Source: Epithemia pelagica
Taxonomy: Eukaryota > Protista > Bacillariophyta
Reading direction: 5' to 3'
Length of the DNA stretch: 64,000 nt
NCBI GenBank assembly: GCA_946965045.2
Contig: OX337235.1
Coordinates: forward strand, 930,001-994,000
A model generated the notes under the pieces. That model saw nothing but the letters and a program-made list of their open reading frames with translations. It made no database searches and was not told where the DNA came from. Below, piece after piece: positions 23,339-59,900 of the stretch (positions are counted from its first letter, which is position 1; every line of letters begins with the position of its first letter). Position numbers and translations under genes: made by a program.

Positions 23339-23429
23339 TACTCCTCTCTAGAGACTCTAGTAGAGGAGTAGTATGGAGGGTAGCACCTCATCACTGACCA
23401 CACATAGAATGTATAGACAACAGACATAG

Positions 23430-24060
23430 TGCCGCGCCGGGTGAGGCGGCCAAAACCTCGAAAATAGCGGCCAAATGACCATGATGGACATCTAGCGTAA
23501 CTCACTCAATATAGGACGCCCATGCCCCAATATCGAGCGACGTCTTCTTCAAACAATGCTCTCGGCCCCTGCGGGCCACTTTTGCTATAGCGGCCATTGT
23601 TATCGAGTTCTTACTCACCATTGTAGGGTCATTTTTTTTTCGTCCACGTAATGGCCGCTAGATTGCCCTTTGGCCGCTACATTGATGGTACTATAAGTCG
23701 ACCACTACGTGCCCTACCATCAAATGGTGCCTACGATGTGTCTATCGTAGTGTAAGGAAGAGCACTTTCAGGTCATATGGGCTATCGGTGGGCGTGATAG
23801 CGCAAACAAACCCCTGCTCGATTTGGCTCGTTTTTGTTGGAACGAGATTTTCATCCGTAACTCGATGTACTGCCGAAGCTCCAATATGGTAGTTCTACAG
23901 TTCATACTTGAAGGGCTTTTACTTTAGGGTCTACCTTCGTGAAACCAACTATCATAACTATCGTAGGTGCCATGGTTATCGCAAAATAGTCGTCCATCGA
24001 TGAGGATTTTCATCTCTCGCGACACGAACCACAATCGATCCTCATCGTCAGTTTCCGCTA
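23430..24060 (+). repeat. Left terminal inverted repeat (unique portion)
   Basis: Reverse complement of 34980-35587 apart from a few substitutions and a 20-bp extra segment at 23758-23777. Confidence 0.93.
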
Positions 24061-24605
24061 CTCGTCTCGTTCAATCTTGATTCTCTGCCCCTCCTTTTTT
24101 GTAGCATTTTAGTTTAGGACCTACTTGAGCGTACCCAAGTCTCAGATTGACCGTAGGCGCCATGGTCATTGAGAATGGGCCATCCATTGATGGAGGCATT
24201 TTTCTCGATGTAGCACGTAGCACACAACATTTCGAGACCGAAGGACGTTGCTACTCGTCTCGTTCAATATTGACTCGCTGCCCCTCCTACTTTGTAGCAT
24301 TTTAGTTTAGGATTTACCTGAGCGTACCCAAGTCTCAGATTGACCGTAGGCGCCATGGTTATTGAGAAGGTGCCATCCATTGATGGAGGCATTTTTCCCG
24401 ATGTAGCACGTAGCACACAACATTTCGAGACCGAAGGACGTTGCTAATCGTCTCGTTCAATATTGACTCTCTTGCCTTCCTACTTTGTAGCATTTTAGTT
24501 TAAAACCTACTTGAGTGTACCCAAGTCTCAGATTGACCGTAGGCGCCATGGTTATTGAGAAGGTGCCATCCATTGATGGAGGCATTTTTCCCGATGTAGC
24601 ACAAA
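24060..24605 (-). repeat. Left subterminal 193-bp tandem array (~3 units)
   Basis: catttcgaga at 24228 and 24421 (period 193). Reverse complement of the right-end array unit. Confidence 0.92.
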
Positions 24606-24758
24606 GCACACGAGATTGGGCAAGCTTCAAATCAATTTTTAAGTGTCGTCTGAAGATGTCGGAGACAGGGGACGATTGAGACGAGAAATGGAAGTGGGGA
24701 GGTCATGGATTACAACAACAGACGAAAGTCTATCACGCAAGCATAAACTTATAGTTTT

Positions 24759-26339
24759 TTATTTTAGAAGAAGTGCGCCACGAACTTTCTTTGGAGATTT
24801 ATAGTGGACATGCTGACTGTGCCGGTAATATGTTGCGAGACGATCTTCTGAGTTGTAGTAGGGTGGTAACTGGTACTCGTTTTTGGGAAGATATGGATGA
24901 ATGGTTTGATCACGCCCTTGATACATGTAGAAATGGGCACGTGGATTGCCTTGGGCACTGGTCAAGAAGCCTCCGGCGTGAACAGTATCGCCTCGCATCA
25001 TGAGGAACGTTCCATAGGGAACGTTGACCACCTCACCCAACTGATGCCTATTCTTCTTGTGGTCCTTGCGGTGCCGCCACAATTCTAAAGTCATTCCGTC
25101 CTCCGTCAGGGGCACAAAAACAGCAAATGGGACACGTTCTCGGAACGGCGCTTTCTTTCGTCCCTTTCCACGAGTCTTGACGTTGCCTTGGGGTGTCCCT
25201 TTCTGTTCAGTCGAACCCTGTTCCTCGTCTGGACTTGGCGTGACCACATCCCATTTGAAATCCAGATGTGGCTCTTGCACCTTTTCAAATGTGGTCTTGA
25301 GGAGCGACAGGTGGATCTGGATACCTTCAGCAAAGGAGTCATCCTCTGCGTACTCCATGTCCACAAGGGCTTGAGCAAGAGTCTTCTTGAACGTTGCCAC
25401 AATTTCAGCTACCCGCTTCTTCCCCCAGGGTGTGAATTCGTCATGTGCCAATAATCCTTCACCGTCAAACATGCGCATTTGGATTTGTGGGGTGTATTGT
25501 TGCACACCCCGCATTCTCTTCGAAATCTTGTCGTCCCCATGCTTCTCCGTTCCGAGAGACCAGACATCACGCAACAATCCAAGAAGCTCTGTCGGAGCGA
25601 CCAAAAAACGTCCTCGTGGATCACCCTCATAATTGATCAACAAGTGGCCATAGTTTTTATTCAGTTCTTTTGCTTTCTCTGCCGGATTTGGTTCCTCCTC
25701 AACCGCTTCCACCTGGTGAGAGTCCTCCGGACTGGGGTTTTGATTGAGTATCGGGGCGTCATATGGAATGCTTGGTTGTGGCTGAACCTGCCCGTATCCT
25801 TCATAAGGGAGCTGCCCCTGAGCCACCAAGACATGGGGCCGATGATGCTCATCATAGAAATGCCCGGGCGTGTAGTGGGAATGTGGAGGATGATGGTATG
25901 GTGGACTGTGGTACTGAGGATGATGGTGTGGTTGAAGGTGGTGTATTTGCGGAGAATTGTAGTGGTGCTGTTGAGTGGCAACATCATGAGGAACAGCAGC
26001 GGCGGGAACAGGATGGTGCAGTTGAAGGTCGTGCGGTTGGTAGTGCTGTTGAATGGCAACATCAGGAGCAGCAGCGGCGGGAACAGGATGGTGCAGTTGA
26101 AGGTCGTGCGGTTGGTAGTGCTGTTGAGTGGCAACATCATGAGGAACAGCAGCAGCGGGAACAGGATGGTGCAGTTGAAGGTCGTGCGGTTGGTAGTGCT
26201 GTTGAATGGCAACATCAGGAGCAGCAGCGGCGGGAACAGGATGGTGCAGTTGAAGGTCGTGCGGTTGGTAGTGCTGTTGAATGGCAACATCAGGAGCAGG
26301 AGCATTACCACCAGAACCACCCATCTTCATCTTCTTCAC
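24759..26339 (-). CDS. Cargo 2OG-Fe(II) dioxygenase (PhyH-like DSBH) with N-terminal His/Gln/Pro repeats; probable 3' half of a fusion gene
   Basis: QEPHLDF (HxD), FVPLT, VNVPYGTFLMMRGDTVHAGG (distal His) and GNPRAHFY (2OG-binding Arg). Alternating 25/26-aa repeats (DVA.QQHYQPHDLQLHHPVPAAA). Confidence 0.82.
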   Translation of the reverse strand: MKKMKMGGSGGNAPAPDVAIQQHYQPHDLQLHHPVPAAAAPDVAIQQHYQPHDLQLHHPVPAAAVPHDVATQQHYQPHDLQLHHPVPAAAAPDVAIQQHYQPHDLQLHHPVPAAAVPHDVATQQHHYNSPQIHHLQPHHHPQYHSPPYHHPPHSHYTPGHFYDEHHRPHVLVAQGQLPYEGYGQVQPQPSIPYDAPILNQNPSPEDSHQVEAVEEEPNPAEKAKELNKNYGHLLINYEGDPRGRFLVAPTELLGLLRDVWSLGTEKHGDDKISKRMRGVQQYTPQIQMRMFDGEGLLAHDEFTPWGKKRVAEIVATFKKTLAQALVDMEYAEDDSFAEGIQIHLSLLKTTFEKVQEPHLDFKWDVVTPSPDEEQGSTEQKGTPQGNVKTRGKGRKKAPFRERVPFAVFVPLTEDGMTLELWRHRKDHKKNRHQLGEVVNVPYGTFLMMRGDTVHAGGFLTSAQGNPRAHFYMYQGRDQTIHPYLPKNEYQLPPYYNSEDRLATYYRHSQHVHYKSPKKVRGALLLK

Positions 26340-26366
26340 CTTCTTCGGAGAATCATCCTGGCTGGA

Positions 26367-27539
26367 TCAACCTCGCTTCTTCTGCACATCCTCATCAGGC
26401 TCCTCACCGCCTTCCTTTGAGGCTGCGATCGTCTTGGTGTCCGAGCTAAGGTTGTAGAATAAAAACAGCTCGTCCCCCTCCGCGATCTCCTTGATCACAC
26501 GAACTAGCAGATTCTTGTCGATACGCACGTTGTAGTCCTTGTGTGCTTCGTCAGGTCCTTCTTCTGTATCGTAGAGGTGATACTGGGGATCATTCATCAA
26601 ATGAAACCCCATGAAAAAGAAATCCTCGTTGTCGGCTTGAACGATGCGTTCTCCGTGCTCTCCAAACTGAATTGCGTACTCGGTCCGACCGACGGTCCGA
26701 GAGGTGATATCCAACCCTGCATACACACCAATCACCTCACCTACTTTGTGCTCTTGTACAGAAAAAAGACCAAACCCGGGGCCTTCTTTTCCCTCTTCAG
26801 CCTTGAGGCCCGACTTCTTGACTGTGAAGATGTGTTTTGTCCCCAGCATAATCTTGAAGATCGGATCATTCTTGAGGGAGAAGCTGAACTGTCGAAACTT
26901 GAGGCACGAGTTGTTTCGAGTTTGCTTGGTTGGGATCCCAATCCCAACGGACTTGGGCACAACTTCCCCAACTTCCAGTCCGTAGTCATTTTTCTTGGGG
27001 GCCGTATTAGAGTTCTTGATGCCTGTGCCTGATTTGCGAATGGGCGCATCTGTCACCGAAAATGTGACGCCAATCTTCTTTGCCACAAACACTCCGTATG
27101 CGTTGATCAGCACAGTGCCATCCTTGATCAAAGTGGACAGAAACTTCAGTCCTCGGATGAAATTGTCCCATGGATCCCGTCCATAGGCCTTGACTTTCTT
27201 TACTGCAGCGACAGCCTCCGCATAATCCTTTTTCCGTTGCTCGCTGAGGCGCTGTTTCAAAGCCGACGCCGAGTCCGTGTATGCATTGTCGTCCTTTAGC
27301 TTGCCGCAACAACTGTCTGCATGCTTTTTCTCGTTGACTTTATGGAGGTCTTCGTCTGTAAGAAACCGATGGCTTGCTCTCGCTTCTTCTGTTGCTGCCA
27401 TTGTTGCTTCGTCTGCTGCTGCCATAGGTGATGGTGAATGTGGCTCCGACTCCGCCTCCGAGGCAGCAACTGCAACATGAGCAAGCGCCTTAAGACGCGA
27501 TTCAGATTGACTTCGTGTTTTCATTGTTCTCCTCTCCAT
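26367..27539 (-). CDS. Cargo SET-domain protein (putative lysine methyltransferase); probable 5' half of a fusion gene
   Basis: GFGLFS..HKVGEVIGVYAG, FHLMND (RxxNH-equivalent), YNVRI and IKEIAEGDELFLFYN. No post-SET cysteines. Confidence 0.85.
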   Translation of the reverse strand: MERRTMKTRSQSESRLKALAHVAVAASEAESEPHSPSPMAAADEATMAATEEARASHRFLTDEDLHKVNEKKHADSCCGKLKDDNAYTDSASALKQRLSEQRKKDYAEAVAAVKKVKAYGRDPWDNFIRGLKFLSTLIKDGTVLINAYGVFVAKKIGVTFSVTDAPIRKSGTGIKNSNTAPKKNDYGLEVGEVVPKSVGIGIPTKQTRNNSCLKFRQFSFSLKNDPIFKIMLGTKHIFTVKKSGLKAEEGKEGPGFGLFSVQEHKVGEVIGVYAGLDITSRTVGRTEYAIQFGEHGERIVQADNEDFFFMGFHLMNDPQYHLYDTEEGPDEAHKDYNVRIDKNLLVRVIKEIAEGDELFLFYNLSSDTKTIAASKEGGEEPDEDVQKKRG

Positions 27540-27966
27540 CTTTCTGTAGAGTAGGGGTTTCTCAGAGAGTCTTGGGTTTTCGAGCGTTTCTCAGACAGAG
27601 AGCGTTCGTCATTGCCTGGTCTGCAGACCACTTGACAAGAAAACAAATCAGACCACACTTGGAAAAAATCTTTCGATTCAACGGGAATACGGTTAAAACG
27701 TTAAATTTTGTTACATATTTCATTATGTTTAGAGTTTAATTAAGGCGGGCGGGCATGCGGAACACGCGCTTTTGTAGCGACTGCTCCACAAAAACTACAT
27801 CTTCCCTCCAACATCGTTCCACAGTTCATTCAACAATCAACCATGTGCTTGCTTGCAAGTTGAAAAGATGCTTTTGACCGCTAATGGAGATTGGACACAC
27901 AAACAGCAATTCTCAATAACCTCTTAGAAACTTGAGAAGACCAAAACGCACGAGAACGATACAGCA

Positions 27967-30900
27967 ATGGAACCACCGCCGCCGAGGCCTAAATCATGTG
28001 GTTTGGGGATTGGATCGAGATGTTTCATGAGGCGTGGAGACATCCCATGCATTATTGTTGAAGCAGTCGAATTTCATAAGTGGATGGTCGCTGGAGTGGA
28101 CGAAAGAGGAAATCTAACAGAGCTAAGAAATGAACGCTCTTCCCCACAGCTTCGATTCCCCAAGAAAGATGAAGGTTTTCCTGGACAACCAGATCCAGTT
28201 GCAGCAACCGGACCTCGACCTACGATCTCAACAACAACCACAGTATCAAATACTCCAGTTCCAGCCGAAACCGCAGCAAGGACAATGACAACGGCATCGA
28301 GGACAGCAACATCCACGTCAATGCCAACGGCAACCACGACAACGACAACGAGCGCGACAACGAGCGCGACAACGAGCGCGACAACGAGCGCGACAACGAC
28401 AACGAACACCCCAGTCGAGACGACAGCAAGGCCGACGGCAGCGGCATCGACAGCAGGAACAACCACACCAATGCAATCGGTAATGACAACGACTGCTGCA
28501 CCAACGACCACGGCAACGACCACTGCAACGACCACTGCAACGACCGCAGCAACGACAACGACTTCAGAGGCTCCTCGCACTGTTGGTGGAGTGATATTAA
28601 CAGATGTAAGCGACGATGAAGAAATTGAAGTTTTGGCACAAGCGGCGATCCTGGACAACGCTCAAGGTCAAGATGCACCTCCGAACAATCAGAACAACCC
28701 ACCAACGACCAGGCAAAATGATGATGAAGATAGTGACAACGAACATGAAGATCAGGATGAAGATGCAGCTGCCGATGAAGAACTCGAAGAAGATGTACCC
28801 GTGGAACTTGTCTATGATGACGAGGATGACGGAGCTGAACAAGAACAAGCACAAGCACGCCAATTGGCTTTCGGGGCTTTGGTTGAAAGAGACGAAGATC
28901 GTCACAGGCATAAAATGGAGCAATACAAGCTTACCAAAGACCATCTTATTGAAAGCAACTGGACCGTAGTCGTCAAGCCTCCCAAGAAAAAAGGAATCGA
29001 CATTGGAGATCGAGTTCACAAGAATGGTAACAATGCTCAATGGGGAACAGTTGTCGACGGGAAGAAGAATCCAGTGGCAAAAGGAAACCTATGGACTGTG
29101 CTTTTTGACGGAGAGAGTGAGCCAACGACCAATTTAACGGGTCAACAGCTACGAAGGAAAGAGGACAAAAGAAGATTTGAGTGGAAGATAGTCGAGGATT
29201 CATCGCCGGATCATCCAGTGTCGGACTATGAGAAGAATGCAATCGTTGGCTACAACTTCGGCAAAAGGATGAGTAAAAGTGAAATAAGCCACGAGAATGA
29301 AAAATACTCCTTTCCATTTCTTGACTTGTTGATGCACTTCTGGCCAGGTAAGTCAGCACTACTCTTTGTTTCTACATCGCAGAAGTTCAACAGTCTCACT
29401 TTCTTGCAATCGGCCTCTGTACAGGGAACTGGCAAAATCAGTTGAGAGTCCTTAATCTTAGTTTAGATCGATTGAATCAAAAGCGTGATAAAAAGAAGAA
29501 AATTCGAATGGTTACGGAAGGCGAGTGGTGGAAAGTTTGGGGGATTATCGTCGCGGCAAGTCCCCTTGGTGTAGGAGGAAAGGCTCTTTTTCAGGATCCT
29601 AGCACTCGTCGGTTATCACCACATGTAAATCTTGGAACGAAAGGCGAAAACATCATGGCAGAGAGTAGGTTCAACGACATTAAGACGCATCTCTATCATG
29701 CCTTCAGGGGGACGGATCCGAATGACAAATGGAATGAAATCCGTCCCCTGATTGATGGGTTCAATGAGAACCGCCGACAAATGATTGCGTCGTCCGTGGT
29801 TCAAGTGCTTGACGAGTCGATGAGTGCGTTTCGACCACGAACGACCAAGCAATCTTTGTTGCCGCATATCTCATTTATTGCCCGCAAGCCCAAACCTCTT
29901 GGGACGGAGTTCAAGGTAAGCTAACACCAGACAGACAATGTTTTGAAGACTTAATGTGTCTGACCTTACTACCTTATTTCATTCACAGGTGGTCGCCAAC
30001 ACCACGACAGGGTGTCTGACCCATCTTGAAATCCAAGAAGGAAGAGTCCCAATGCGGCGTAAGAAGTTTGTCGCGAAGTCTGGTCCATCGGGCGGCTGCA
30101 CACTGCGGCTTGTCGAAGGTTCACAATACAGTGGACAGCTGTCAAGCGCACGCCACGAAGCTGGAAAGGCCTCCAAGCGCTACCTGTATTTAGGCGACTC
30201 CTGGTTTGGAAGTGTCCAGGTCGCTGAATGCCTCAAGTGTTCGTGGAGGGAACAGGACGATCGACGCAATCGCACTTCCTTTCCGTTCTACGTGGACAAA
30301 GAGAAAGGGCTGAACACGGATGGACATGAGTTCATTGGTGCTGTGAAGACAGCGCACTCATGGTTTCCCAAGAAACAGATCGAGAAGCAGATGAAGTCTT
30401 TTCCATCCGGAGCCTACCTTGTCATGGAGTGTACTGCCCCTGTCACTGGAGTGAAGCTCGTAGCGGTTGGGTACAAGTACAATACAAGGAAGGTTCTTCT
30501 CTTTGTCATGACCAAAGATGCCGGGCATACTCAACCGGGCGCACCATACATTGCTCGCTTCACAGATGTGTTTGGAAATATCAAGCAGCGGAGAGTCGAG
30601 CGTCCCCACTGTATTTCAAAATACTTTCGGCACGCCAATGCAATTGACCGGCACAATCACATCCGTCAGGGTCTTCTACGCCTCGAAGAACTATGGTTAA
30701 CTAAAAATCCGTGGTTTCGGATTGTGACGACAGTCTTCGGTATGACGGTGGTTGATTGTTATCTTGCACTGCGTTTTCACATGCAAGTGGAACCTTTCCT
30801 GAATACCTCAATCCACGACTTTGCGGATATGCTGGCTTATGACTTAATCAACAATCCATATTCCGAACGCAGTTCAGTTGAACGAAGAGCGGGTGTGCTT

Positions 30901-31302
30901 GAAAGCTTGCCAGTGACAAACAACCTTTCGGTGTGTACAGATGCCTCCGTAACTGTGCCATCCAGTGTTGGCCATACCTGTTCAAGCAGTATATCACCCG
31001 CGTCCGTATTTTCTGAGCTTACAATTGATTCGGTCGTTTGTCACAGCGTTGTTGAACAGGACAACGTTTCTTCATCAGACCAAAGAGGCATGAAGCGTAA
31101 ATGTGTTATTTGTAAGAATGACACGCGAGCCATGTGTGGCCATCCACAATGCCGCATGTTCACCAAGACTTGGCGCTCGATAACCTACGTGGGAACACCA
31201 GTGTGCAAGCCATCTGTGGGCATTCGATATGGGAAACAACGAACTTGTATCGAGCAGCACGCCATGAACTTTGCTGCGGCAAAAGGAGGAAATGCGACTT
31301 AA
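27967..31302 (+). CDS. piggyBac-family (DDE_Tnp_1_7-like) transposase, ~1061 aa; introns 29348-29424 and 29916-29988
   Basis: Splicing two GTAAG..CAG introns joins three ORFs in frame (1381+491+1314 nt = 1062 codons). Catalytic triad in VLDES, LGDSWF and AIDRHN; RKPKPLG.EFK motif; C-terminal Cys/His-rich domain (CVIC..CGHPQC..C..C..H). Confidence 0.92.
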
Positions 31303-31417
31303 TGAAACTTCTGTGTGCACAAGAACTACACTCATTCTACATGTTTGCGCCTCTCTACATATTATGAAATTAGGAAACCACCATGAATAAGAATACTAAC
31401 TATCATTTGTTACCCGC

Positions 31418-31990
31418 TTACGTGATTTTAACACTTTCCTGGTTGGGCCACGTCTCCGTTGCTTTGTCATAGAGCGACATGAATGCATTCATCCCAGTAA
31501 GACTCATTCGCACAGTAATGATCATGGGTCCCATTGTCACCTTGGTATCCAAGGAGTGAGAGGTCTCAATGGTGAGTTCTCCTTTGACAAGGGACCCATT
31601 TTTGGAACGGAACTTCTTGGAGCGAATTTTGTTGTGAACCGATCCGACTGGGATGACGATGTCAGGCATCGAATCGTCCTTCTTGTCACGGCCAAACGCG
31701 CAAATTGATAGCATTCCACCGTTGGTACCATACCTGGAGCGCTGTAAAAGAATCACGCCTCGATCCACAACAAGTGTCCCCTTTTCTCCTTTCTCCCCGA
31801 GAGTGGCGTCTTGAAGGTGTACGTTCACACCCGCTTCACCGTAGATGGTTAAGCGGCTTCCTTGGAGCTCGATGTTGCTCCCCGTATCTTGTACGAGGTG
31901 AAAGCCGTTAGGAAGGAGAATCCGATTGCGCGATTCATTCTCGTGTTCGGACATTGTACTTCGATCCGTCCTAAGCATAGAGAGAATCAA
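31418..31990 (-). CDS. Cargo ORF of unknown function (beta-strand-rich, ~180-190 aa)
   Basis: Non-repetitive ORF inside the TIRs, convergent with the transposase. No family recognised. Confidence 0.5.
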   Translation of the reverse strand: MILSMLRTDRSTMSEHENESRNRILLPNGFHLVQDTGSNIELQGSRLTIYGEAGVNVHLQDATLGEKGEKGTLVVDRGVILLQRSRYGTNGGMLSICAFGRDKKDDSMPDIVIPVGSVHNKIRSKKFRSKNGSLVKGELTIETSHSLDTKVTMGPMIITVRMSLTGMNAFMSLYDKATETWPNQESVKIT

Positions 31991-32393
31991 TGAGTCGAGG
32001 TTATTGCCACCATTGTAAGCAATGATTTAGATGCCGCGGAACCACTTACTTCTACGCTCGTTTTGATTTGCAAACAAAAGCTCTTTCCTCAGGTGAGCAC
32101 TTCATTCAGGTGGCCTATCGATTCTCTCCTCTCCTTCGGAAAAGCTCTTACGTCGTAAAATCGATTTCTCAGACGACATGTAGTAAACCTCATTTGATTT
32201 GGGGGAACGGTTGGGGACTTCCTACTATTGCCACTCGGGAGCAATTACGAAAGTGTGACAAGTTACTTAAGAAAATTTTCTTCCGTTGAGCGTTGAGCCG
32301 CAAGCCGGCTTCCCATACGAGATCCGATTTTATGGTGAGACGTCACATCAATCAAACATCAACGAGAGACAGAGCCGACAGCGACCTTCATAA

Positions 32394-32978
32394 AACGGCG
32401 TCAACGAGAAACACATCAAGAACAACTGCAACTACAACAACAAAAGCAACAACACAATATCACTCTATATCGACAAGCGCCGTGTTAGTGCGCGCCTTCA
32501 AAACCGCACACACACAAGTGTTGTTCGAACCAGTGTGTCAAAATCTGCCGTGCGCCCAACTGAACAAGGTGCCCTCAAGAAAACCAAAATCAAGGCAGAG
32601 ACAGCAACCATTGGAAAGGCAGAATTGCTCTCGGAAGGATTGGATCAAGAATGTGGGGACAAAACCGTAGTTGTTCTTGGAACCGTTGAAGAATCAATCA
32701 CCAAGATTTGCGACAATTTAGAGGAAGAAGGATTGAATGGTGGAGACAAGACTCCAGTACGCCACCTGAAAATCAAGTTTGCCGACGACCTTAGCCCAGT
32801 CAACGAGGAGATCGAAAAGCCTGCATCACGTTTCTCAATCATGAGCAGCATCTCGATGCGTAGTGCTCAGACTGTATCCTCCCGTGGAACTGCTGTTGAT
32901 AGCGATCTTTCTTTCGACTTTGCCGAGACCCAACAAGATGACTGCGAGAATCTTTACGACAACTACATGCAGTCCTAA
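32394..32978 (+). CDS. Possible cargo ORF (acidic/Ser-rich C-terminus), start uncertain
   Basis: The frame of ORF 32535-32978 is open from 32394 but has no ATG there. No family recognised. Confidence 0.25.
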   Translation, partial: NGVNEKHIKNNCNYNNKSNNTISLYIDKRRVSARLQNRTHTSVVRTSVSKSAVRPTEQGALKKTKIKAETATIGKAELLSEGLDQECGDKTVVVLGTVEESITKICDNLEEEGLNGGDKTPVRHLKIKFADDLSPVNEEIEKPASRFSIMSSISMRSAQTVSSRGTAVDSDLSFDFAETQQDDCENLYDNYMQS

Positions 32979-33129
32979 ACAAGGTTGAACTAGATATAAA
33001 TCAAAATAGCATTGACTATTCTTCAACTTCCTTGAATCATCACTCAGAAGTCATAGAAACTTACGGATTCAAAGGGCAAACTACCAAATGGAAACACCAC
33101 TTCCGTTGATGGTCGCTACTAGGATAATA

Positions 33130-34980
33130 AACACCATGGCACCTACGGTCAATCTGAGACCTGGGTACGCTCGAGTAGGTCCTAAACTAAAATGCTACAA
33201 AGTAGGAGGGGCAGCGAGTCCAAATTGAAGGAGCAAATCGCAACGTCCTTCGGTCTCGAAATGTTGTGTGCTACGTGCTACATCGAGAAAAAAATGCCTC
33301 CATCAATGGATGGCACCTTCTCAATGACCATGGCGCCTACGGTCAATCTGAGACTTGGGTACGCTCAGGTAGATCCTAAACTAAAATGCTACAAAGTAGG
33401 AAGGCAAGCGAGTCAATATTGAACGAGACGAGTAGCAACGTCCTTCGGTCTCGAAATGTTGTGTGCTACGTGCTACATCGGGAAAAATGCCTCCATCAAT
33501 GGATGGCACCTTCTCAATGACCATGGCGCCTACGGTCAATCTGATACCTCGTTACGCTCAAGTAGGTTCTAAACTAAAATGCTACAAAGTAGGATGGGCA
33601 GAGAGTCAATATGGAACGAGACGAGTAGCAACGTCCTTCGGTCTCGAAATGTTGTGTGCTACGTGCTACATCGGGAAAAATGCCTCCATCAATGGATGGC
33701 ACCTTCTCAATGACAGTGGCGCCTACGGTCAATCGGAAACCTCGTTACGCTCAAGTAGGTTCTAAACTAAAATGCTACAAAGTAGGAAGGCAAGCGAGTC
33801 AATATTGAACGAGACAAGTAGCAACGTCCTTCGGTCTCGAAATGTTGTGTGCTACGTGCTACATCGGGAAAAATGCCTCCAACAATGGATGGCACCTTCT
33901 CAATGACCATGGCGCCTACGGTCAATCTGATACCTCGTTACGCTCAAGTAGATCCTAAACTAAAATGCTACAAAGCAGGAAGGCAAGCGAAACAATATGG
34001 AACGAGACGAGTAGCAACGTCCTTCGGTCTCGAAATGTTGTGTGCTACGTGCTACATCGGGAAAAATGCCTCCATCAATGGATGGCTCCTTCTCAATGAC
34101 CATGGCGCCTACGGTCAATCGGAAACCTCGTTACGCTCAAGTAGATCCTAAACTAAAATACTACAAAGTAGGAGGGGCAGAGAGTCAATATTGAACGAGA
34201 CGAGTAGCAACGTCCTTCGGTCTCGAAATGTTGTGTGCTACGTGCTACATCGGGAAAAATGCCTCCATCAATGGATGGCACCTTCTCAATGACCATGGCG
34301 CCTACGGTCAATCTGATACCTCGTTACGCTCAAGTAGGTTCTAAACTAAAATGCTACAAAGTAGGAAGGCAAGCGAGTCAATATTGAACGAGACGAGTAG
34401 CAACGTCCTTCGGTCTCGAAATGTTGTGTGCTACGTGCTACATCGAAAAAATGCCTCCATCAATGGATGGCACCTTCTCAATGACCATGGTGCCTACGGT
34501 CAATCTGATACCTCGTTACGCTCAAGTAGATCCTAAACTAAAATGCTACAAAGTAGGAAGGCAAGCGAGTCAATATTGAACGAGACGAGTAGCAACGTCC
34601 TTCGGTCTCGAAATGTTGTGTGCTACGTGCTACATCGAGAAAAATGCCTCCATCAATGGATGGCCCATTCTCAATGACCATGGCGCCTACGGTCAATCTG
34701 ATACCTCGTTACGCTCAAGTAGATCCTAAACTAAAATACTACAAAGCAGGAAGGCAAGCGAAACAATATGGAACGAGACGAGTAGCAACGTCCTTCGGTC
34801 TCGAAATGTTGTGTGCTACGTGCTACATCGGGAAAAATGCCTCCATCAATGGATGGCTCCTTCTCAATGACAGTGGCGCCTACGGTCAATCTGATACCTC
34901 GTTACGCTCAAGTAGATCCTAAACTAAAATACTACAAAGTAGGAGGGGCAGAGAGTCAATATTGAACGAGACGATTAGCG
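33130..34980 (+). repeat. Right subterminal 193-bp tandem array (~9.5 units)
   Basis: tccttcggtctcgaaatg at 33246, 33441, 33634, 33827, 34020, 34213, 34406, 34598 and 34791. Confidence 0.96.
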
Positions 34981-35587
34981 GAAACTGACGATGAGGATCG
35001 ATTGTGGTTCGTGTCGCGAGAGATGAAAATCCTCATCGATGGACGACTATTTTGCGATAACCATGGCACCTACGATAGTTATGATAGTTGGTTTCACGAA
35101 GGTAGACCCTAAAGTAAAAGCCCTTCAAGTATGAACTGTAGAACTACCATATTGGAGCTTCGGCAGTACATCGAGTTACGGATGAAAATCTCGTTCCAAC
35201 AAAAACGAGCCAAATCGAGCAGGGGTTTGTTTGCGCTATCACGCCCACCGATAGCCCACCTTACACTACGATAGACACATCGTAGGCACCATTTGATGGT
35301 AGGGCACGTAGTGGTCGACTTATAGTACCGTCAATGTAGCGGCCAAAGGGCAATCTAGCGGCCATTACGTGGACGAAAAAAAAAATGACCCTACAATGGT
35401 GAGTTAGAACTCGATAACCATGGCCGCTATAGCAAAAGTGGCCCGCAGGGGCCGAGAGCATTGTTTGAAGAAGACGTCGCTCGATATTGGGGCATGGGCG
35501 TCCTATATTGAGTGAGTTACGCTAGATGTCCATCATGGTCATTTGGCCGCTATTTTCGAGGTTTTGGCCGCCTCACCCGGCGCGGCA
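34980..35587 (-). repeat. Right terminal inverted repeat (unique portion)
   Basis: Reverse complement of 23430-24060. Confidence 0.93.
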
Positions 35588-36656
35588 ATAGACCTACGGT
35601 GGACAAACGCCTATGCGTCTTAACCCTATCTCTACCTAACCTCTCCCCAAACTCCAAACTCCAAAAGCACTGACCACAGACCGTGCATCGACTTCCATTG
35701 GACCACAGGTCTTCACAACGTTGACAGGCTTTGCTCATGACTCATGACCAAGAGATCAATTGGAAGATCGAAGGAAGTGACGAGGTCATTCGGGTTTGCA
35801 AAATTTGGCACCTACAATGGCATTCTGTAAAGAAGTTGAGAATGCGTTGAAAAAATTTTTGTTCTCAAAGACCAAAGACAGCCAATGGTACATACAATCC
35901 CTTGTATCGGCAAAGATCACGCTCGAACTGGACTCGTATGGATTGCAATGGCGCAGATACAGAACAAAGAATGACTGTTCTTGTAGGGAATCTATTTCTC
36001 TGATATCAACATGCTGAGACTCACAGGTGTGATGTGTACTCGTGGGGAAGACCGTCTGTGGCAACGGAGCTTGGGTTCCAAAGGGGAGATCTCTTGATGC
36101 AGTCGTCTTGGCCGTTGTTCTTTTTCGAATGGGGTGTCCATCTTATTGTCTCATACATCCTGACTTGTCTTCGATCCAATGTCGGAGGGCACAAAAGGCT
36201 TCCTTGGTTTTGATCGAGTGATCCGGTCCGACTTGGTGTAAACCCGTAGTGGCGTACAACAAGATCCCGTTGGCCATAATCTTTCCGATGGATTTTGTCG
36301 CAACGGGATTCTTCACCAATTTTGGACGCGGGTTTGCCACAATCCACGATGCTGACGACGGAAAACTTGCTTGTTTCTGATACATGGTCCTCAGGTAACA
36401 GACTACGAAAATGTTGCGCAGGAGAGCATAGTTAATGACACAAGTGTCGCAATGTAATAACAAGCACATGTAACTCTGTTTGATTAGTAACTCTCTTTGA
36501 TGAAAGCAGCAGCGTATGAAAACCTTTGCTGCATATCAGAATTGAAGTGTCAGAGGTAGACTTCATTTGAAATAAATGTAAGCTTTCTTCTCTTCTGGAT
36601 CCTTAGTTGTTGCCGTTGCGATTGCCATTGCCTAAGCTTTCTTCTCTTCTGGATCC

Positions 36657-38029
36657 TTAGTTGTTGCCGTTGCCGTTGCCGTTGCCATTGCCATTGCCAT
36701 TGCCGTTGCCATTGCCATTGCCGTTGCCATTGCCGTTGCCGTTGCCATTGCCATTGCCGTTGCCATTGCCATTGCCATTGCCATTGCCGTTGCCATTGCC
36801 GTTGTTGCCGTTGGCGTTGTTGCTGCCATTGCCGTTGCCGTTGTTGCCGACAACGTTGCGACGCAAACCTACGTCATCGAGGATTTTAGTAAACGCATTT
36901 GACCTCAACGCCTTGAAAAAGTCGTCTGCGGCGTCATTTTGCTCTTGAGTAAGAGTGCGGGTGGTCTTGGCAATGGCAAAGGTGCCAACACGGTTACCGT
37001 CCAAGGGGTTTCGCTGTTTCTGCACCAACACGTCTGGGTCAGACGTTTCACCCACTTCATCCTTATCAAGGTAAATGGCAGTAAAGGTGTTTGGATTGTC
37101 TCGCATAGCTTCCACAGCCAAATGAAGGAAAAGAAGACCGGCATCGCCCTGCTTGTTGGCAATCACGTGAGGGATACTACGCCACATGGGCTGTCCAATG
37201 GTGACGACGTTCTCATTAAACAACTGGTCTCTCAATGCGATCGCTTCTTCAAAAATGGTCACATTGTCTAGCGGATCAGTTGGATCTAAAGTGTCATCTT
37301 CGGGATAATTCACGGCAATGTTAAACAAACTGAACTTGTATGCGTTGTTGAAAGAGCCCGGCTCTCCCGCCGGATCCGACGTGGCGAATCGGTCAGCTGA
37401 CAAATTCTTCAAATCCCAGAATGTGTTAATGGTGGTGTCACCCTTGCGTTTCAAAATGACACTGCCCTACGTGGAAAGAAAGAATTCACGAGTGGAATTG
37501 TCAATCTTGTCACCAAGTAGGTCGAGAATAGGTGGAGCTCCTGTGTAATAATGTGGTTCGGCATCTGTAAAAAGGACATTTCCCACCTTGAGGATACCAT
37601 TGTCCGTTTGAGGATTACCAATGGTGGACTGGTGGTATACAAGTAACTGTCCTGATACGATGAATTCTTGGGGAAATACTCTTCCTTCAAAAGACGTGCC
37701 AAGGCAGGGTACCAGTTCCCGTTGACGCTCAGAATTAACAGGGTGTCCTTGGCAGACACAGTCAAGTGGACGTCGTTTACTTCATTGTAAAAGGGCTGCG
37801 TCAAGGCCGGAATGGAGGTTCGATTGGCACCGTCGTTTTTGTCCTCCACGGGCAACCAAGGATCTTGCGACCAAGCCAACGGGGTGTCAATGCAAAACTC
37901 TTCAATCGGTGAAGCAAACAGATTAGGATCAATTGACAATCCACGTAGATGATCTTTGCCATCCACAAGAAGAGGCAAGCCAACAAAAAGGGAAAGACCC
38001 CAGGAGAAGAATCCACTGTTGACTTTCAT
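36657..38029 (-). pseudogene. Secreted ModA-like protein, copy 3, disrupted
   Basis: Same signal peptide as copy 1. A 1-bp deletion after YTTSPP (near 37622) and TAC>TAG (near 37467) relative to intact copy 2. Confidence 0.82.
36661..36850 (-). repeat. (GGCAAY)n hexamer microsatellite encoding a C-terminal (Gly-Asn)n tail
   Basis: About 30 ttgcca/ttgccg units in frame with the ModA-like copy 3. Adjacent ~41-bp direct duplication (36579/36633) includes the stop codon. Confidence 0.95.
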
Positions 38030-56997: not shown

Positions 56998-59900
56998 TCA
57001 TCGAGCCGTCGGGACTGAGCGAAAGAAAAAAGACCGAAGACACCGTTGTTGGCGCCGTAGGGACCGGGACGCAGCTGACGCGACCGGGGTAGAAATGCGT
57101 CGAAGAAAAGCAATTTGGAGGTGAGGAGGGTCCTGTAACCGAGTGTCCAAAGGACAACGAAACAAAAGCCTCCAAGCTGGGGAATTCCGCAAAGGAGAGA
57201 GATAGGCATCCCGAATAGCCGCACATCGCTCAGCCCGCTTGCGTTCGACCTCAGCTGCATGAAGGATGGCGTTCCGATGTTCCCACTGGTCCCATGCTGT
57301 ATTCCATACTTGTTGGATCAGCAAGGAGAGCCAGCGACGGCCCGATTGCCGTTTACCCAAAAATTGATAATATGCTTGCTGAACGTCGGCCCAACGCCAT
57401 GACCAATGACCCCAAATTGCATTAGTCCAGCCTAGTTGAAGTTGATCCTCCAAGGCTTCCCTCAATCCGGGAGTCGATGTGAACTCCTGTGGAGGAGGGG
57501 AGCCATCAACCCACGACCTTAAATGGGAAAGAATCATTCGGGCCATGGACGGATGAGTGTGGCGCAATGCTAACCACCTGTCCAACTTGGAAAGAAAATG
57601 CATCCATCGTGCTTTTACGTCCGGATGAGCACACGTGACGACATGATCGGCTGTCTCCATTTCGTGACCACACCGTGGGCACGTGGGATTCTGCCACTGA
57701 CGTCGACGGACCATCTCAACACCAACGGCCGACCGATGAGCGGTGGCCTTGATCACCCAATGGCGGTGTCCTTGCGGAAGCAGCGCTAAGGCCCCAGACC
57801 GGGCCTCCCACTGTACCATGGTGCACGTCCCAGATCCAAAGCGGTTGAGTCGCTGCCAATGGTCCATAGCCGGGGGGGACAGGACGTGGGTCCGGATCGT
57901 GGAAGCCAATTCCGAAACGACCATCGAATCCCCACATGAGATGGGAGGGAGAGGAAAACTGAAAAACTGAGGAGTACACTCGGGGCGAAGACGCTCATAA
58001 ACCGCCGTAGCACACGAATCCACGAACACATTGCGTCGAGCCCAGATGTCCAAGGGGCCGTCCCCAGCATCCTGGTGCCCTTTGACATGACGCCACTGCC
58101 ACTTAATCCCCACCAACCCATTCAAGAGGGACTGACACAAGGAGAGGAGATCCCAGCTATGGTCCGCTACCGTTGCCGGATGGCCCTTTCGAAAGACTCG
58201 GCCAAGAACCGAATCACTGTCGGTCGCAAACGTTAGAGTCCCAGAAGTTTCGGGAAACGTAAACAAAATTCGACGTAGAAAGGTCACAATCCCCAAAAGG
58301 CCCGCTAATTCACTTCGATAGGAGCACTGACTGTTCGGGGGGCCCGGAATCCGGAACCCCGCGGCCAGAATTGCTATCTCTTCCGCGTGAGTGGCGATGC
58401 CCCAGGCGCAGGTACCGGCGACCCCAGCATGTGCCGAGCCATCCGAAAACACCGCTAACGAGCCATCCCTAAGCGCAGAAAGCAGACGGGAGATCGTGGA
58501 TTCCGATGGGGGAATAAACCATACTGGCGCCACTTCAGCCAACTGTGGGTCATGCCAATCAAAAGTGGAACTACGCGCCGAAAAACGAGGAAACCGAGGC
58601 GACCAATCCACCGGAGTAGGGTCCCATGTCAATAATGACACCGATTGCCGAGAGCCATATACATCAGCAGCATGCAGTGGGGGGGGCGAGTACCAAAGAG
58701 GCAAGGGATACTTGAGTCGTCGTAATGGCGTAGACAGCCCGTCCTCGCTGCTGTGGCCGACGGATCGCGACCGTCCACTCCTCCACGGAAGAGGGGACGT
58801 ACACACGATCCCACACCGGACAATACATCGTCATTTGCGGCAACGCCGCGTCCAAGTGCCAAGATCCAAGGGTGGTCGTGATCCGCCGAAAACGAGGCTC
58901 CACCCCAAACGTGGTAGCCAGAGCCTCCTGCCATTCAGTCCACTGAAGGGCGGAGTGCGGGGGCGACTGTGGCCATAGGTCAAGAAAAGGCCGTCGATCA
59001 CAGGGTCCAGCACCTGTCCAAGCCTGCAGCAGGATGTGCGTCCCGTCCGTCGTCACGATGTCCGCTAACGTAAGAGCGCGAAGAAAAAGCCTGCAACGAT
59101 TAAGCCGAGCCAGGACCGCGGAGGACCGAATACCCCTTTGCCAAAAGGCAACCATTAAAAACACGTCACCCGTTCGCAAAGGCTGAAGAGGGGGGACAGG
59201 GGACGAGAGGCGGATGGAATAACGACTGCAGAAAGCCCATAACGACGTGAGCCATGTTGATACAGCGCAAGAACCCCAGACCTGGAAATCCAAATCCCAC
59301 GGAAAAGCCGAGTGACCCAATTCCACCTGTAAGTATTCCAACGAGTTACGAAGCAAGAAACCAGTAATGGCCGTATGGGACGAACCGAACATAACAAATG
59401 CCTTGATGTGGGCGAGCCCCTGTTCAACGAATAAATTGGGGACCGAGAACCCGCCAGCAGAGTACGGAGCGTGTACCACTGAGCGGGGCATGGAACGCAC
59501 AATATGGGATCTGCTCAGGCCAACCTTGAGAAGGGGAGCCATCAATGACTGACATTCCAGCTCAGTAAAGGTGGTAGCCGCTAATGGGTAGTCCAAGGTT
59601 TTGAGAATCCCCGTATGTAGGGACAGCCACACCAAACGGTGGGGCAACCGGCGGACTCGGATTCGTTCAGTCCAAGCTTTGATCTTAGCCTGTAGGTAAT
59701 CGTATTCCGCCACCATAGAGCCGCTCGGAGCTGTCCACACGCCGAGAGTTTTTCGGGCCTCCGTTGGTTCCACTCGTTCGATCGTTACCATCCTGCCGGA
59801 CGGCGACCGAACTTGAAGGGAAGCCGGAGCATCCGCGGTGGTCACCATCTTCCAACCAACACCACACCACCTATAATCGACCAAATACCAGTGACATTTT

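What the first reader, a model, noticed from the sequence alone, without database searches (positions are those of the whole stretch)
23430..35587. 12-kb piggyBac-like transposon carrying putative chromatin-modifying cargo
Seen: an exact ATAG duplication flanks ~630-bp inverted repeats. They enclose an apparently intact spliced DDD transposase, a SET domain, a 2OG-Fe(II) dioxygenase and one or two unknown ORFs. Established: typical piggyBacs are ~2.5 kb and encode only a transposase. Mobile elements carrying chromatin enzymes are known elsewhere, e.g. TET/JBP with fungal KDZ transposons. Inference: this is a recently mobile cargo element whose payload may counter or redirect host silencing. 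I do not recognise this architecture as a described family but cannot exclude that it is catalogued.
Basis: partly seen in the sequence, partly recalled or inferred. Interest (0 to 1): 0.9.

Follow-up and report, generated by a model that had tools for sequence, protein, structure and literature searches.

The report
Four-gene piggyBac transposon, partly decayed copy
This is a real, recently inserted 12-kb jumping gene of the piggyBac type in a probable diatom; it lands at CTAG-like sites instead of TTAA and carries three extra conserved genes, one fusing a SET methyltransferase-like domain to an iron/2-oxoglutarate dioxygenase, but in this copy that fusion gene is cut by a stop codon and what it does remains unproven.

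Summary
Window 23430-35587 is a 12,158-bp DNA transposon flanked by an exact ATAG duplication. Each end has about 0.6 kb of unique inverted repeat plus arrays of a 193-bp unit.

It encodes an intact three-exon, 1061-aa piggyBac-superfamily transposase. The 492-aa "unknown ORF" is transposase exon 1. Two more small genes follow; one has lost its ATG here.

Four other copies in the same assembly sit at different loci with CTAG or ATAG duplications. Two diverged subfamilies keep the same four genes, the TGCC...GGCA tips and CTAG. Between subfamilies the cargo is under purifying selection (dN/dS 0.15-0.30), and intact fusions exist in both.

The dioxygenase domain is a generic PhyH/prolyl-hydroxylase-like fold, not JmjC or TET. 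A chromatin or anti-silencing role is therefore inference only, and no RNA data were available.

The scan found and followed up this family before on other DNA (s1-248251, s1-235293). SET and 2OG accessory genes are already known on other transposon superfamilies. I rate it a new variant of a known kind.

The parts
23426..23429 (.). Left target-site duplication, ATAG
   Evidence: It is identical to the right-hand 4-mer. Other copies have CTAG/CTAG (L002, L003) and ATAG/ATAG (L005).
23430..24056 (+). Left terminal inverted repeat, unique part (627 nt); tip 5'-TGCCGCGCCGGG
   Evidence: It is 99% complementary to the right end. The tip is conserved as TGCC...GGCA in the diverged subfamily.
24057..24611 (+). 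Left subterminal array, 2.9 copies of a 193-bp unit
   Evidence: Copy number ranges from 2.9 to 13.8 among copies and accounts for most of the length differences (11.0-14.3 kb).
24759..27539 (-). SET-2OG fusion gene (926 codons in intact copies), cut here by one in-frame TGA
   Evidence: It is intact in L003 (921 aa as called) and in L021 (894 aa, diverged subfamily).
26367..26369 (-). Copy-specific nonsense codon TGA; all four other copies read CGA (Arg)
   Evidence: Contigs from DNA runs X1 and X2 read G at 26369 on the plus strand. The change is a CpG>TpG transition.
26451..26777 (-). SET-like domain (fusion residues 255-363): GFG, VYAG, MNDP (the canonical NH reads ND) and ELFLFY motifs
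   Evidence: Pfam PF00856 scores 18.1 bits here and 20.3 in L003. Five of 9 family members hit it, best E 4.4e-7. A family profile finds MLL1 SET domains first in the PDB (E 0.04). Atlas feature score to SET clusters is 0.97.
26340..26381 (-). Basic stretch KKRG(*)SSQDDSPKKVKK, resembling a bipartite nuclear localisation signal and spanning the stop
   Evidence: Read from the sequence. A similar basic pair is kept in L007/L021. The localisation signal is inference, not tested.
25886..26342 (-). His/Pro/Gln-rich linker encoded by 75-nt tandem repeats
   Evidence: It is the fastest-evolving part of the fusion (dN/dS 0.63).
24762..25742 (-). Fe(II)/2-oxoglutarate dioxygenase domain: H (25266-68), D (25260-62), H (24978-80), R (24939-41)
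   Evidence: HxD...H are invariant and R nearly invariant (at least 90%) in a 50-sequence alignment. The AlphaFold model has pLDDT 87.9. The best structural matches are PhyH-type dioxygenases at Z 11.5-11.7 and prolyl hydroxylases at Z 10.3-10.8.
27540..27966 (.). 427-bp divergent intergenic region between the fusion gene and the transposase (presumed bidirectional promoter)
   Evidence: Gene geometry. Promoter function is inferred.
27967..29347 (+). Transposase exon 1: 460-aa N-terminal extension with Thr-rich and acidic low-complexity tracts
   Evidence: Parts are conserved in L006, L007 and L021. Junction 1 is bridged by homologs P0075 and P0086.
29425..29915 (+). Transposase exon 2, with the first catalytic Asp (D590, 29811-29813)
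   Evidence: PF13843 DDE_Tnp_1_7 scores 35 bits against a cut-off of 22.4. The stretch around D590 aligns to piggyBat's LDE motif.
29989..31302 (+). Transposase exon 3: D694 (30196-98), D844 (30646-48) and a C-terminal Cys-rich domain (from 31093)
   Evidence: D694 and D844 are invariant in the 22-sequence alignment A2. Twenty-eight uninterrupted homologs bridge junction 2. The Cys-rich tail aligns to the piggyBat tail.
31418..31954 (-). Accessory gene ORF178 (190 aa from an upstream TTG). It is intact here and is the most conserved of the four genes; function unknown
   Evidence: Intact in 5 of 5 copies. It is 74-77% identical in L006, L007 and L021, with dN/dS 0.19. No family, Atlas or outside-genome relatives were found.
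32457..32978 (+). Accessory gene ORF173. Its start codon is lost in this copy (ATG>ATA at 32457-32459)
   Evidence: It is intact with ATG in L002, L003 and L005, and 51-64% identical in L006, L007 and L021, with dN/dS 0.30. No known family was found.
33133..34979 (-). Right subterminal array, 9.6 copies of the 193-bp unit
34980..35587 (-). Right terminal inverted repeat, unique part; tip ...CCCGGCGCGGCA-3'
35588..35591 (.). Right target-site duplication, ATAG

Best explanation
Window 23430-35587 is one copy of a young, multi-copy, autonomous DNA transposon family of the piggyBac superfamily in a probable diatom.

Shown:
- A three-exon, 1061-aa DDD transposase lies between long ends. Each end has a unique ~0.6-kb inverted repeat plus a variable 193-bp array.
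- Insertion duplicates a 4-bp target that is CTAG or a one-base variant (ATAG here). The central TA is constant.
- The family carries three further genes in a fixed order. They are a SET-like/Fe(II)-2OG dioxygenase fusion transcribed divergently from the transposase, an orphan 178-aa gene tail-to-tail with it, and an orphan 173-aa gene.
- All four genes are kept in subfamilies whose transposases are only ~63% identical. There the cargo evolves under purifying selection as strong as on the transposase core.

Inferred:
- Movement is cut-and-paste by the transposase acting on the TGCC...GGCA tips.
- The accessory proteins serve the element rather than the host.
- The fusion protein probably enters the nucleus, since a bipartite NLS-like basic stretch lies in its linker. 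There it would modify proteins by lysine methylation and by hydroxylation or oxidative demethylation. Chromatin at or near the element is the most likely target, favouring its expression or integration or slowing its silencing. I put that role at about 35%.

This copy is partly decayed. Its transposase and ORF178 are intact. Its fusion gene ends after the SET half (CGA>TGA), and ORF173 has lost its ATG. If it moves again, it would depend on intact copies (such as L003) for those functions.
For: Ends and duplication:
- Termini and TSDs.
- Window, L002, L003 and L005 have complete ends and matching TSDs at unrelated flanks; L004 has lost its left end.
- The internal 8.5 kb differs by only 0.6-1.8% between copies. 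This copy has 21 private substitutions.

Transposase:
- PF13843 scores 35 bits, above the cut-off.
- A family profile hits piggyBat 9c0f at E 2e-6, covering the first Asp motif and the Cys-rich tail.
- The second and third Asp are invariant in a 22-sequence alignment.
- Both splice junctions are bridged by uninterrupted homologs.
- It is intact in 3 of 5 copies.

Cargo linkage:
- L006, L007 and L021 keep the same gene order.
- dN/dS for L003 against L007: SET 0.15, 2OG 0.30, ORF178 0.19, ORF173 0.30, transposase core 0.17.
- Intact fusions exist in L003 and L021.
- The diverged subfamily ends ...GGCA|CTAG at two independent insertions.

Domains:
- 2OG: motifs, model and fold matches.
- SET.
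Against: - No RNA evidence. The only runs holding the sequence are DNA-like, because their contigs run straight through both introns.
- No empty site was found.
- Within the young family dN/dS is about neutral (0.3-1.8). Four of five copies have a broken fusion gene. Selection is therefore visible only between subfamilies, where dS is near saturation (0.75-2.0).
- The SET structure model failed (pLDDT 34), and the NH motif reads ND.
- The dioxygenase resembles small-molecule and prolyl hydroxylases rather than histone or DNA demethylases.
- Its relatives elsewhere are ordinary stand-alone genes among host genes.
- CpG>TpG decay of copies suggests the host methylates them regardless.
Confidence: 0.8

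Rival explanations
1. The cargo is functional for the element but does not act on chromatin. The SET-like domain would methylate a non-histone protein, such as the transposase itself or a host repair or translation factor. The PhyH/prolyl-hydroxylase-like domain would hydroxylate a protein or small molecule. The benefit would come through transposase regulation or host physiology rather than anti-silencing.
For: - The top structural matches are small-molecule PhyH-type dioxygenases and prolyl hydroxylases. These include ones acting on translation factors or ribosomal proteins (P4H with EF-Tu, OGFOD1, Tpa1). No JmjC or TET appears in the top 50 of an unbiased scan of 48,161 chains.
- Homologs of the domain are stand-alone genes among host genes in Epithemia and in metagenomic eukaryote contigs.
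- No post-SET or reader domains were detected.
Against: - The NLS-like basic linker and the SET fusion point to a nuclear role (sequence).
- Repeated capture of SET and 2OG genes by unrelated transposons is read in the literature as epigenetic counter-defence (PMC12730594; bioRxiv 10.1101/2025.02.11.637652).
Confidence: 0.3
2. The cargo genes are passengers. They would be host genes captured once and carried along without benefit to the element, now decaying.
For: - Four of five copies in this subfamily have a disrupted fusion gene, including this one.
- Within-family dN/dS is about 1, and 1.76 for the SET part.
Against: - All three accessory genes persist in order, with open frames, across subfamilies at ~50-75% protein identity and dN/dS 0.15-0.30.
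- Intact fusions exist in both subfamilies.
- ORF178 is intact in 5 of 5 copies and is more conserved than the transposase core.
- Neutral drift within a young family is expected for any transposon gene after insertion.
Confidence: 0.07
3. The structure is a chance juxtaposition or an assembly artefact. Host genes and a piggyBac would happen to lie between two inverted satellite arrays, without moving as a unit.
For: The long repeat-array arms are the kind of sequence that assemblers can misjoin.
Against: - The same 8.5-kb interior and the same termini occur at five loci with different flanks, with matching 4-bp duplications in all four complete copies.
- Independent Logan contigs from three DNA runs cover the interior.
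- A second subfamily has the same layout.
Confidence: 0.02

Closest known systems
Canonical piggyBac / piggyBat transposons (piggyBac superfamily, Pfam PF13843)
   Same: - Homologous DDD transposase with a C-terminal Cys-rich domain.
- 4-bp target-site duplication with a central TA.
- Cut-and-paste mechanism, inferred from the family.
   Different: - The target is CTAG, ATAG or CTAC, not TTAA.
- The tips are TGCC...GGCA, not CCC...GGG.
- The ends are ~0.6 kb plus 193-bp arrays rather than 13-19-bp repeats.
- The transposase is 1061 aa with a 460-aa N-terminal extension and two introns.
- The element is 11-14 kb with four genes instead of ~2.5 kb with one.
Two-gene piggyBac families with a KolX / P2X7-ballast-like partner (Kojima 2022, PMC9587614; also noted in this genome by the scan, s1-256924)
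   Same: A piggyBac-superfamily element that carries a conserved accessory gene besides the transposase.
   Different: - The accessory content differs: here a SET-2OG fusion plus two orphan genes.
- No ballast-like gene was detected here (the Pfam scan found none).
Teratorn (piggyBac-herpesvirus fusion in teleosts; reviewed in PMC6431247)
   Same: A piggyBac transposase mobilising a much larger, multi-gene unit, with long inverted repeats near the ends.
   Different: - Teratorn's cargo is a whole alloherpesvirus genome (41-182 kb) in fish.
- Here the cargo is three cellular-type genes in an alga, with no viral genes.
SET-carrying DNA transposons of oomycetes (HarbingerS and MuDR families of Phytophthora; cited in PMC12730594)
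   Same: A DNA transposon in a stramenopile that encodes a SET-domain protein as an accessory gene. It is read in the literature as a way to alter epigenetic marks.
   Different: - The transposase superfamily is different.
- Those elements are not reported to fuse SET to a dioxygenase.
- Sequence homology of the SET modules could not be tested here.
Red-algal Plavaka accessory-gene (PAG) cassette (bioRxiv 10.1101/2025.02.11.637652)
   Same: - Three accessory genes travel with a DDE transposase and hop between transposon superfamilies.
- One accessory gene has a SET domain.
- Another has a 2OG oxygenase domain whose best HHpred hit is a PhyH-family protein.
- One is of unknown function.
- Tandem repeat arrays lie next to the oxygenase gene.
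   Different: - There SET is fused to an N6-adenine methylase and the oxygenase to a ParB-like domain, on separate genes. Here SET and 2OG are fused in one gene.
- The carriers there are Plavaka, Mutator, Zisupton and Fanzor elements, not piggyBac.
- Homology to PAG2 and PAG3 was not testable with these tools.
Fungal KDZ and other transposons encoding TET/JBP dioxygenases (PMC12730594)
   Same: A DNA transposon carrying a 2OG-dependent dioxygenase as conserved cargo.
   Different: - The dioxygenase here is not TET/JBP-like by fold ranking.
- The transposase superfamily and the host lineage are different.

Membership tests
piggyBac superfamily | Transposase homologous to DDE_Tnp_1_7 (PF13843) with the D-D-D triad | tested here: met
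   - Exon 2 scores 35 bits against a cut-off of 22.4.
- A family profile hits piggyBat 9c0f at E 2.2e-6, including the LDE motif.
- D694 and D844 are invariant in alignment A2; positions are.
- Exon 3 alone gave no Pfam hit, so the core is divergent.
piggyBac superfamily | C-terminal cysteine-rich domain | tested here: met
   C372, C375, C383, C406 and C420 are nearly invariant and H424 is invariant in A2. The tail aligns to the piggyBat tail (domain 2).
piggyBac superfamily | [quoted passage not shown] | tested here: not met
   - The length (4 bp) is met, but the sequence is not TTAA.
- Observed: ATAG twice, CTAG twice and CTAC at one single end in this subfamily, and CTAG at two insertions of a diverged subfamily.
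- Membership therefore rests on the transposase. This is a lineage with a changed target.
piggyBac superfamily | Short terminal inverted repeats with 5'-CCC...GGG-3' tips | tested here: not met
   The tips are 5'-TGCC...GGCA-3', and the arms are ~0.6 kb unique plus 193-bp arrays. The canonical tips are taken from established knowledge and were not re-derived here.
SET-domain lysine methyltransferases (PF00856) | Significant match to the SET profile or fold | tested here: inconclusive
   - This copy scores 18.1 bits and L003 20.3 bits, against a cut-off of 22.4.
- Five of 9 family members match, best E 4.4e-7.
- The PDB profile search finds MLL1 SET first, at E 0.04.
- Atlas feature score to SET clusters is 0.97 with 188 shared features.
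- The AlphaFold model failed (pLDDT 34).
SET-domain lysine methyltransferases (PF00856) | Cofactor and catalytic motifs GxG, NH(S/C) and ELxF/Y..Y | tested here: inconclusive
   GFG, VYAG and ELFLFY are present, but the NH motif reads ND (MNDP) in all members. Activity cannot be judged from sequence.
Fe(II)/2-oxoglutarate dioxygenases | HxD...H iron triad, a 2OG-binding Arg, and the double-stranded beta-helix fold | tested here: met
   - H159, D161 and H255 are invariant and R268 is present in at least 90% of 50 sequences.
- The model has pLDDT 87.9 and pTM 0.86.
- All top-50 structural matches are Fe/2OG oxygenases, at Z up to 11.7.
- No Pfam model matches directly.
JmjC histone demethylases / TET-JBP DNA dioxygenases | Closest structural relatives are JmjC or TET/JBP enzymes | tested here: not met
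   - None appears in the top 50 of either VIA-align ranking or of the Foldseek PDB list, nor among the 30 listed Swiss-Prot matches.
- The top matches are PhyH-type enzymes (AsqJ, OkaE, KanJ, FtmOx1), prolyl hydroxylases and, lower down, the AlkB family.
- A weak match cannot be excluded.
Red-algal PAG cassette | Sequence or profile homology of the SET and 2OG modules to PAG2 and PAG3 | not testable with these tools
The resemblance is architectural only (bioRxiv 10.1101/2025.02.11.637652).
Active (autonomous) transposon | Intact transposase, intact ends, polymorphic or empty sites, transcription | tested here: inconclusive
   - Transposase and both ends are intact, and the TSD is perfect.
- No empty site was found.
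- No RNA run holds the sequence.

The most novel reading that the evidence does not exclude
A piggyBac lineage has changed two hallmarks of its superfamily.

First, its transposase would be natively CTAG-directed rather than TTAA-directed.

Second, it would have recruited a portable epigenetic module, a fused SET writer and 2OG oxygenase, plus two orphan partners. This would be the same enzyme pair that red-algal Plavaka, Helitrons and oomycete Harbinger/MuDR elements acquired independently or by exchanging modules.

On this reading the fusion protein acts in cis-like fashion on the element's own chromatin. The 193-bp arrays could serve as a landing platform. The effect would be to delay silencing or to mark integration sites. 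That would make SET plus 2OG a general transposon counter-defence kit across eukaryotic algae.
Probability: 0.3. Interest if true: 0.85.

Novelty: new variant of a known kind. Interest (0 to 1): 0.6.

Why it matters
TTAA targeting is treated as the signature of piggyBac and limits its use as a genome-engineering tool. A natural lineage that inserts at CTAG-like sites gives a comparative handle on how the transposase reads its target.

The conserved SET-2OG fusion adds a fourth transposon superfamily, and a new algal lineage, to the short list of elements that carry histone- or DNA-modifying-type enzymes. Repeated capture of the same two enzyme classes argues that they pay their way for the transposon.

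The family also offers natural controls. Near-identical copies exist with an intact fusion gene (L003) and with a broken one (this one). These could be compared for chromatin state, methylation and mobility. The comparison would make the anti-silencing idea directly testable in a diatom.

Tried and rejected
- **RNA evidence.** The only runs holding the element (X1-X3) behave as DNA. Their contigs cross both introns without joints and include contigs of hundreds of kb. Expression and splicing therefore remain untested.
- **Empty site.**
  - The flanking 93-aa ORF is on record on one contig only, so no alternative haplotig was available.
  - Reconstructed empty sites of four copies match nothing else in the DNA held.
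  - The reconstructed ATAG empty site has no exact match in JGI metagenome contigs.
- **Environmental copies.** A 22-nt tip pattern matched 7 metagenome contigs. All are GC-rich bacterial sequence with no similarity beyond the pattern, so they are chance matches.
- **SET structure.** The AlphaFold model from a 9-sequence alignment failed (pLDDT 34) and was not used.
- **Direct sequence searches.** The 2OG and SET parts found nothing significant in the PDB. No Pfam model matches the 2OG domain or its 50 relatives.
- **SET-2OG fusions elsewhere.** None of the listed 2OG-domain relatives carries a SET-like N-terminus. The SET half has relatives only in this assembly.
- **ORF178 and ORF173.** Pfam, Atlas and homolog searches gave nothing outside this genome.
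- **Tudor-like module.** By eye, the transposase N-terminal extension (residues ~330-400) resembles a Tudor-like module. Pfam and PDB sequence searches do not support this, so I dropped it.
- **L007 duplication.** L007 has lost its left tip, so no matching TSD pair exists there. Its true right tip was recovered by comparison with L021. L006 has no detectable inverted ends.
- **Within-family dN/dS.** There are too few substitutions for it to be informative.
- **RNA families.** No Rfam family lies in the element.
- **Literature.** I found no paper describing a piggyBac with a CTAG target or with SET/2OG cargo. Repbase and Dfam could not be queried.

Full report
**1. What is in the window**

The termini are exact. 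The 31-mer TGCCGCGCCGGGTGAGGCGGCCAAAACCTCG occurs once on each strand, at 23430 and 35587, against none expected by chance. ATAG lies immediately outside both ends.

The arms are 99% complementary over the outer ~330 nt and 94% over the next 812 nt. Each arm has a unique part (627 nt on the left) followed by tandem copies of a 193-bp unit. There are 2.9 copies on the left (24057-24611) and 9.6 on the right (33133-34979). No Rfam family lies in the element.

**2. Genes**

*Transposase.* It is one gene of three exons: 27967-29347, 29425-29915 and 29989-31302.
- Both introns start GT, end AG and keep the frame, giving 1061 aa without a stop.
- Junction 2 is bridged by 28 uninterrupted homologs and junction 1 by two.
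- Exon 2 passes the Pfam threshold for DDE_Tnp_1_7.
- A profile of the family finds the solved piggyBat transposase at E 2.2e-6, covering the first Asp motif and the Cys-rich tail.
- The three Asp residues are D590, D694 and D844.

*SET-2OG fusion.* On the other strand, the SET ORF (26367-27539) and the HxD...H ORF (24759-26339) share one frame and are separated by a single TGA. All four other copies read CGA at that codon, so the stop is a private CpG>TpG change. DNA contigs from public runs also read the CGA form.

*Two small genes.* ORF178 (31418-31954, minus strand) is intact. ORF173 (32457-32978, plus strand) has ATA where the other copies have ATG.

**3. Other copies**

The transposase's 90% cluster led to five loci in one ENA assembly. 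L001 is the window itself. L002-L005 are other copies with the same 8.5-kb interior, which differs by 0.6-1.8% between copies.

| Copy | Flanking 4-mers | Length |
|---|---|---|
| Window | ATAG / ATAG | 12,158 bp |
| L002 | CTAG / CTAG | 11,990 bp |
| L003 | CTAG / CTAG | 14,319 bp |
| L005 | ATAG / ATAG | 11,021 bp |
| L004 | left end lost; CTAC on the right | incomplete |

- The flanks are unrelated, so these are independent insertions.
- Length differences come mainly from the number of 193-bp units, which ranges from 2.9 to 13.8.
I take the two to be the same copy.

Gene integrity across the five copies:

| Gene | Intact in |
|---|---|
| Transposase | Window, L002, L003 (3 of 5) |
| SET-2OG fusion | L003 only (1 of 5) |
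| ORF178 | all 5 |
| ORF173 reading frame | 4 of 5 (the window's frame is open but lacks its ATG) |

Private substitutions are biased to CpG>TpG (10 of 21 in this copy), although CpG positions are about 11% of sites. This fits methylation-driven decay after insertion. Methylation itself is inferred.

**4. Is the cargo part of the element?**

Two diverged subfamilies, L006 and L007/L021, have transposases ~63% identical to this one. They keep the same four genes in the same order.

| Comparison, L003 vs L007 | dN/dS |
|---|---|
| SET domain | 0.15 |
| 2OG domain | 0.30 |
| ORF178 | 0.19 |
| ORF173 | 0.30 |
| Transposase core | 0.17 |
| Repeat linker of the fusion | 0.63 |

- dS is high (0.75-2.0), so the ratios are approximate but clearly below 1.
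- L021 carries an intact 894-aa fusion.
- Both L007 (right end) and L021 (left end) stop at ...CACCCGTGAAGGCA followed by CTAG, and then diverge into different flanks. The TGCC...GGCA tips and the CTAG target are therefore properties of the whole clade.
- Within the young family dN/dS is near neutral and uninformative.

**5. What the cargo domains are**

*2OG domain.*
- It has 231 relatives in the 1.84-billion-protein representative library.
- In a 50-sequence alignment Q156, H159, D161 and H255 are invariant and R268 is nearly so.
- The AlphaFold model is confident (pLDDT 87.9, pTM 0.86).
- Foldseek, VIA-align on Foldseek's list, and an independent VIA-align scan of 48,161 chains all return only Fe(II)/2OG oxygenases.
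- The ranking is nearly flat: PhyH-type enzymes (AsqJ, OkaE, KanJ, FtmOx1) at Z 10.8-11.7, prolyl hydroxylases at 10.3-10.8 and AlkB-family enzymes at 8.5-9.9. No JmjC or TET appears in the top 50.
- The fold is certain; the substrate is open.
- Named or placed relatives are stand-alone genes. One is Epithemia clementina KAL7564762.1, lying among PP2C and DnaJ genes. Others are MMETSP transcripts and metagenomic eukaryote contigs among housekeeping genes. None sits next to a transposase. This suggests capture of a host gene.
- None of the listed relatives has a SET-like N-terminus.

*SET half.*
- Five of nine family members hit Pfam SET, best E 4.4e-7. This copy scores 18.1 bits and L003 20.3 bits, against a cut-off of 22.4.
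- The family profile ranks MLL1 SET domains first in the PDB (E 0.04).
- Protein-language-model features match SET clusters at 0.97.
- GFG, VYAG and ELFLFY motifs are present, but the NH motif reads ND.
- The structure model failed.
- I call it SET-like, with activity unknown.

*Linker.* A basic KKRG-x9-KKVKK stretch in the linker looks like a bipartite nuclear localisation signal and is mirrored in L007/L021. This is read from the sequence and is inference.

*ORF178 and ORF173.* They have no detectable relatives outside this assembly and match no known family.

**6. How it most likely works**

Shown:
- a piggyBac-type transposase;
- conserved tips;
- 4-bp duplications at CTAG-like sites with a constant central TA;
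- co-inherited, selected accessory genes.

Inferred from the family:
- The element moves by cut-and-paste excision and integration.
- The 4-nt flanks left on the donor after excision are complementary to each other for any duplicated target. Non-palindromic ATAG sites therefore remain compatible with seamless repair.

Inferred, at about 35%: the fusion protein is nuclear and modifies chromatin proteins at or near the element, to the element's benefit. The main alternative, at about 30%, is a non-chromatin protein or small-molecule substrate.

This copy could still supply transposase. It lacks a full-length fusion protein and probably ORF173.

**7. Comparison with what is known**

- A few piggyBac families carry a KolX-like second gene (PMC9587614).
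- Teratorn is a piggyBac that carries a herpesvirus (PMC6431247).
- SET genes are carried by HarbingerS and MuDR elements of Phytophthora, and TET/JBP genes by several fungal transposon lineages (PMC12730594).
- Red-algal Plavaka and other elements share a three-gene cassette. It comprises a SET-containing protein, a 2OG oxygenase whose best hit is a PhyH-family structure, and an unknown protein (bioRxiv 10.1101/2025.02.11.637652).

The present family is the same idea on a piggyBac chassis. SET and 2OG are fused into one protein, and the insertion target has changed. I found no paper describing it. Repbase and Dfam could not be checked.

**8. Earlier notes of this scan**

- Notes s1-252212 and s1-252642 describe this same stretch (the single TGA; the ATAG and TGCC ends). 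I confirmed both.
- Follow-ups s1-248251 and s1-235293 reached the same family-level reading on other copies.
- New here:
  - the copy-specific lesions and their CpG origin;
  - ATAG and CTAC variants of the target;
  - the same tips and CTAG in a diverged subfamily;
  - between-subfamily dN/dS values;
  - the unbiased fold ranking that argues against JmjC or TET;
  - the host-gene context of the 2OG relatives;
  - the literature parallels.

**9. Limits**

- There is no RNA evidence, no empty site and no biochemical evidence.
- The organism is coded in the tools. "Diatom" rests on the Epithemia and Attheya relatives and on earlier notes.

Noticed in passing
L020:10001-11215 (ENA ERZ21939226 ctg1353l): A stand-alone homolog of the fusion's N-terminal plus SET half (P0253, 404 aa, 49% identical, Pfam SET). 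It has no 2OG part, transposase, ORF178 or ORF173 within 10 kb and no inverted repeats, and it sits near an ABC-transporter gene. It could be the host progenitor of the cargo or a domesticated remnant.
   Followed up: partly
L006:3286-5128: In the degraded subfamily copy L006, pieces matching the 3' end of the 2OG domain are duplicated in tandem upstream of the gene, about 1.25 kb apart. Part of the cargo gene has been drawn into the arm repeats.
   Followed up: no
window 25563-26264: Contigs from DNA runs X1 and X2 show a variant that skips 700 bp of the fusion gene's linker and repeat region, at about one seventh of the local depth. At least one further copy therefore carries an internal deletion.
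   Followed up: no
window 24618-33130 and the matching interiors of L002-L005: Private substitutions of each copy are dominated by C>T/G>A changes at CpG (window 10 of 21, L002 12 of 29, L004 11 of 32). This is expected if the inserted copies are cytosine-methylated.
   Followed up: partly
window 27967-29347: The transposase has a 460-aa N-terminal extension with long Thr-rich and acidic tracts. Its first ~80 residues and residues ~210-460 are conserved in diverged subfamilies. A Tudor-like pattern seen by eye around residues 330-400 got no support from Pfam or PDB sequence searches.
   Followed up: partly
L007:1493 and L007:14214: The diverged copy L007 has lost about 300 bp of its left tip. 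Its inverted homology starts inside the arm, and no matching duplication is seen there. Its right tip is complete and flanked by CTAG.
   Followed up: yes
window 36579-36873: About 1 kb to the right of the element lies a long imperfect hexamer/12-mer array (GTTGCC/ATTGCC units). It lies inside a called 265-aa ORF on the minus strand, probably a low-complexity coding repeat.
   Followed up: no
window 57001-64000: GC content rises to 0.55-0.58 from 0.44-0.54 in the rest of the window, with positive AT skew. This region has a different composition.
   Followed up: no
L003:19185-21251 and L004:1-2297: Ty3/gypsy-type retrotransposon genes (RVT_1, RNase H, integrase) lie within a few kb of two other copies of the element. 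This suggests insertion into repeat-rich neighbourhoods.
   Followed up: no
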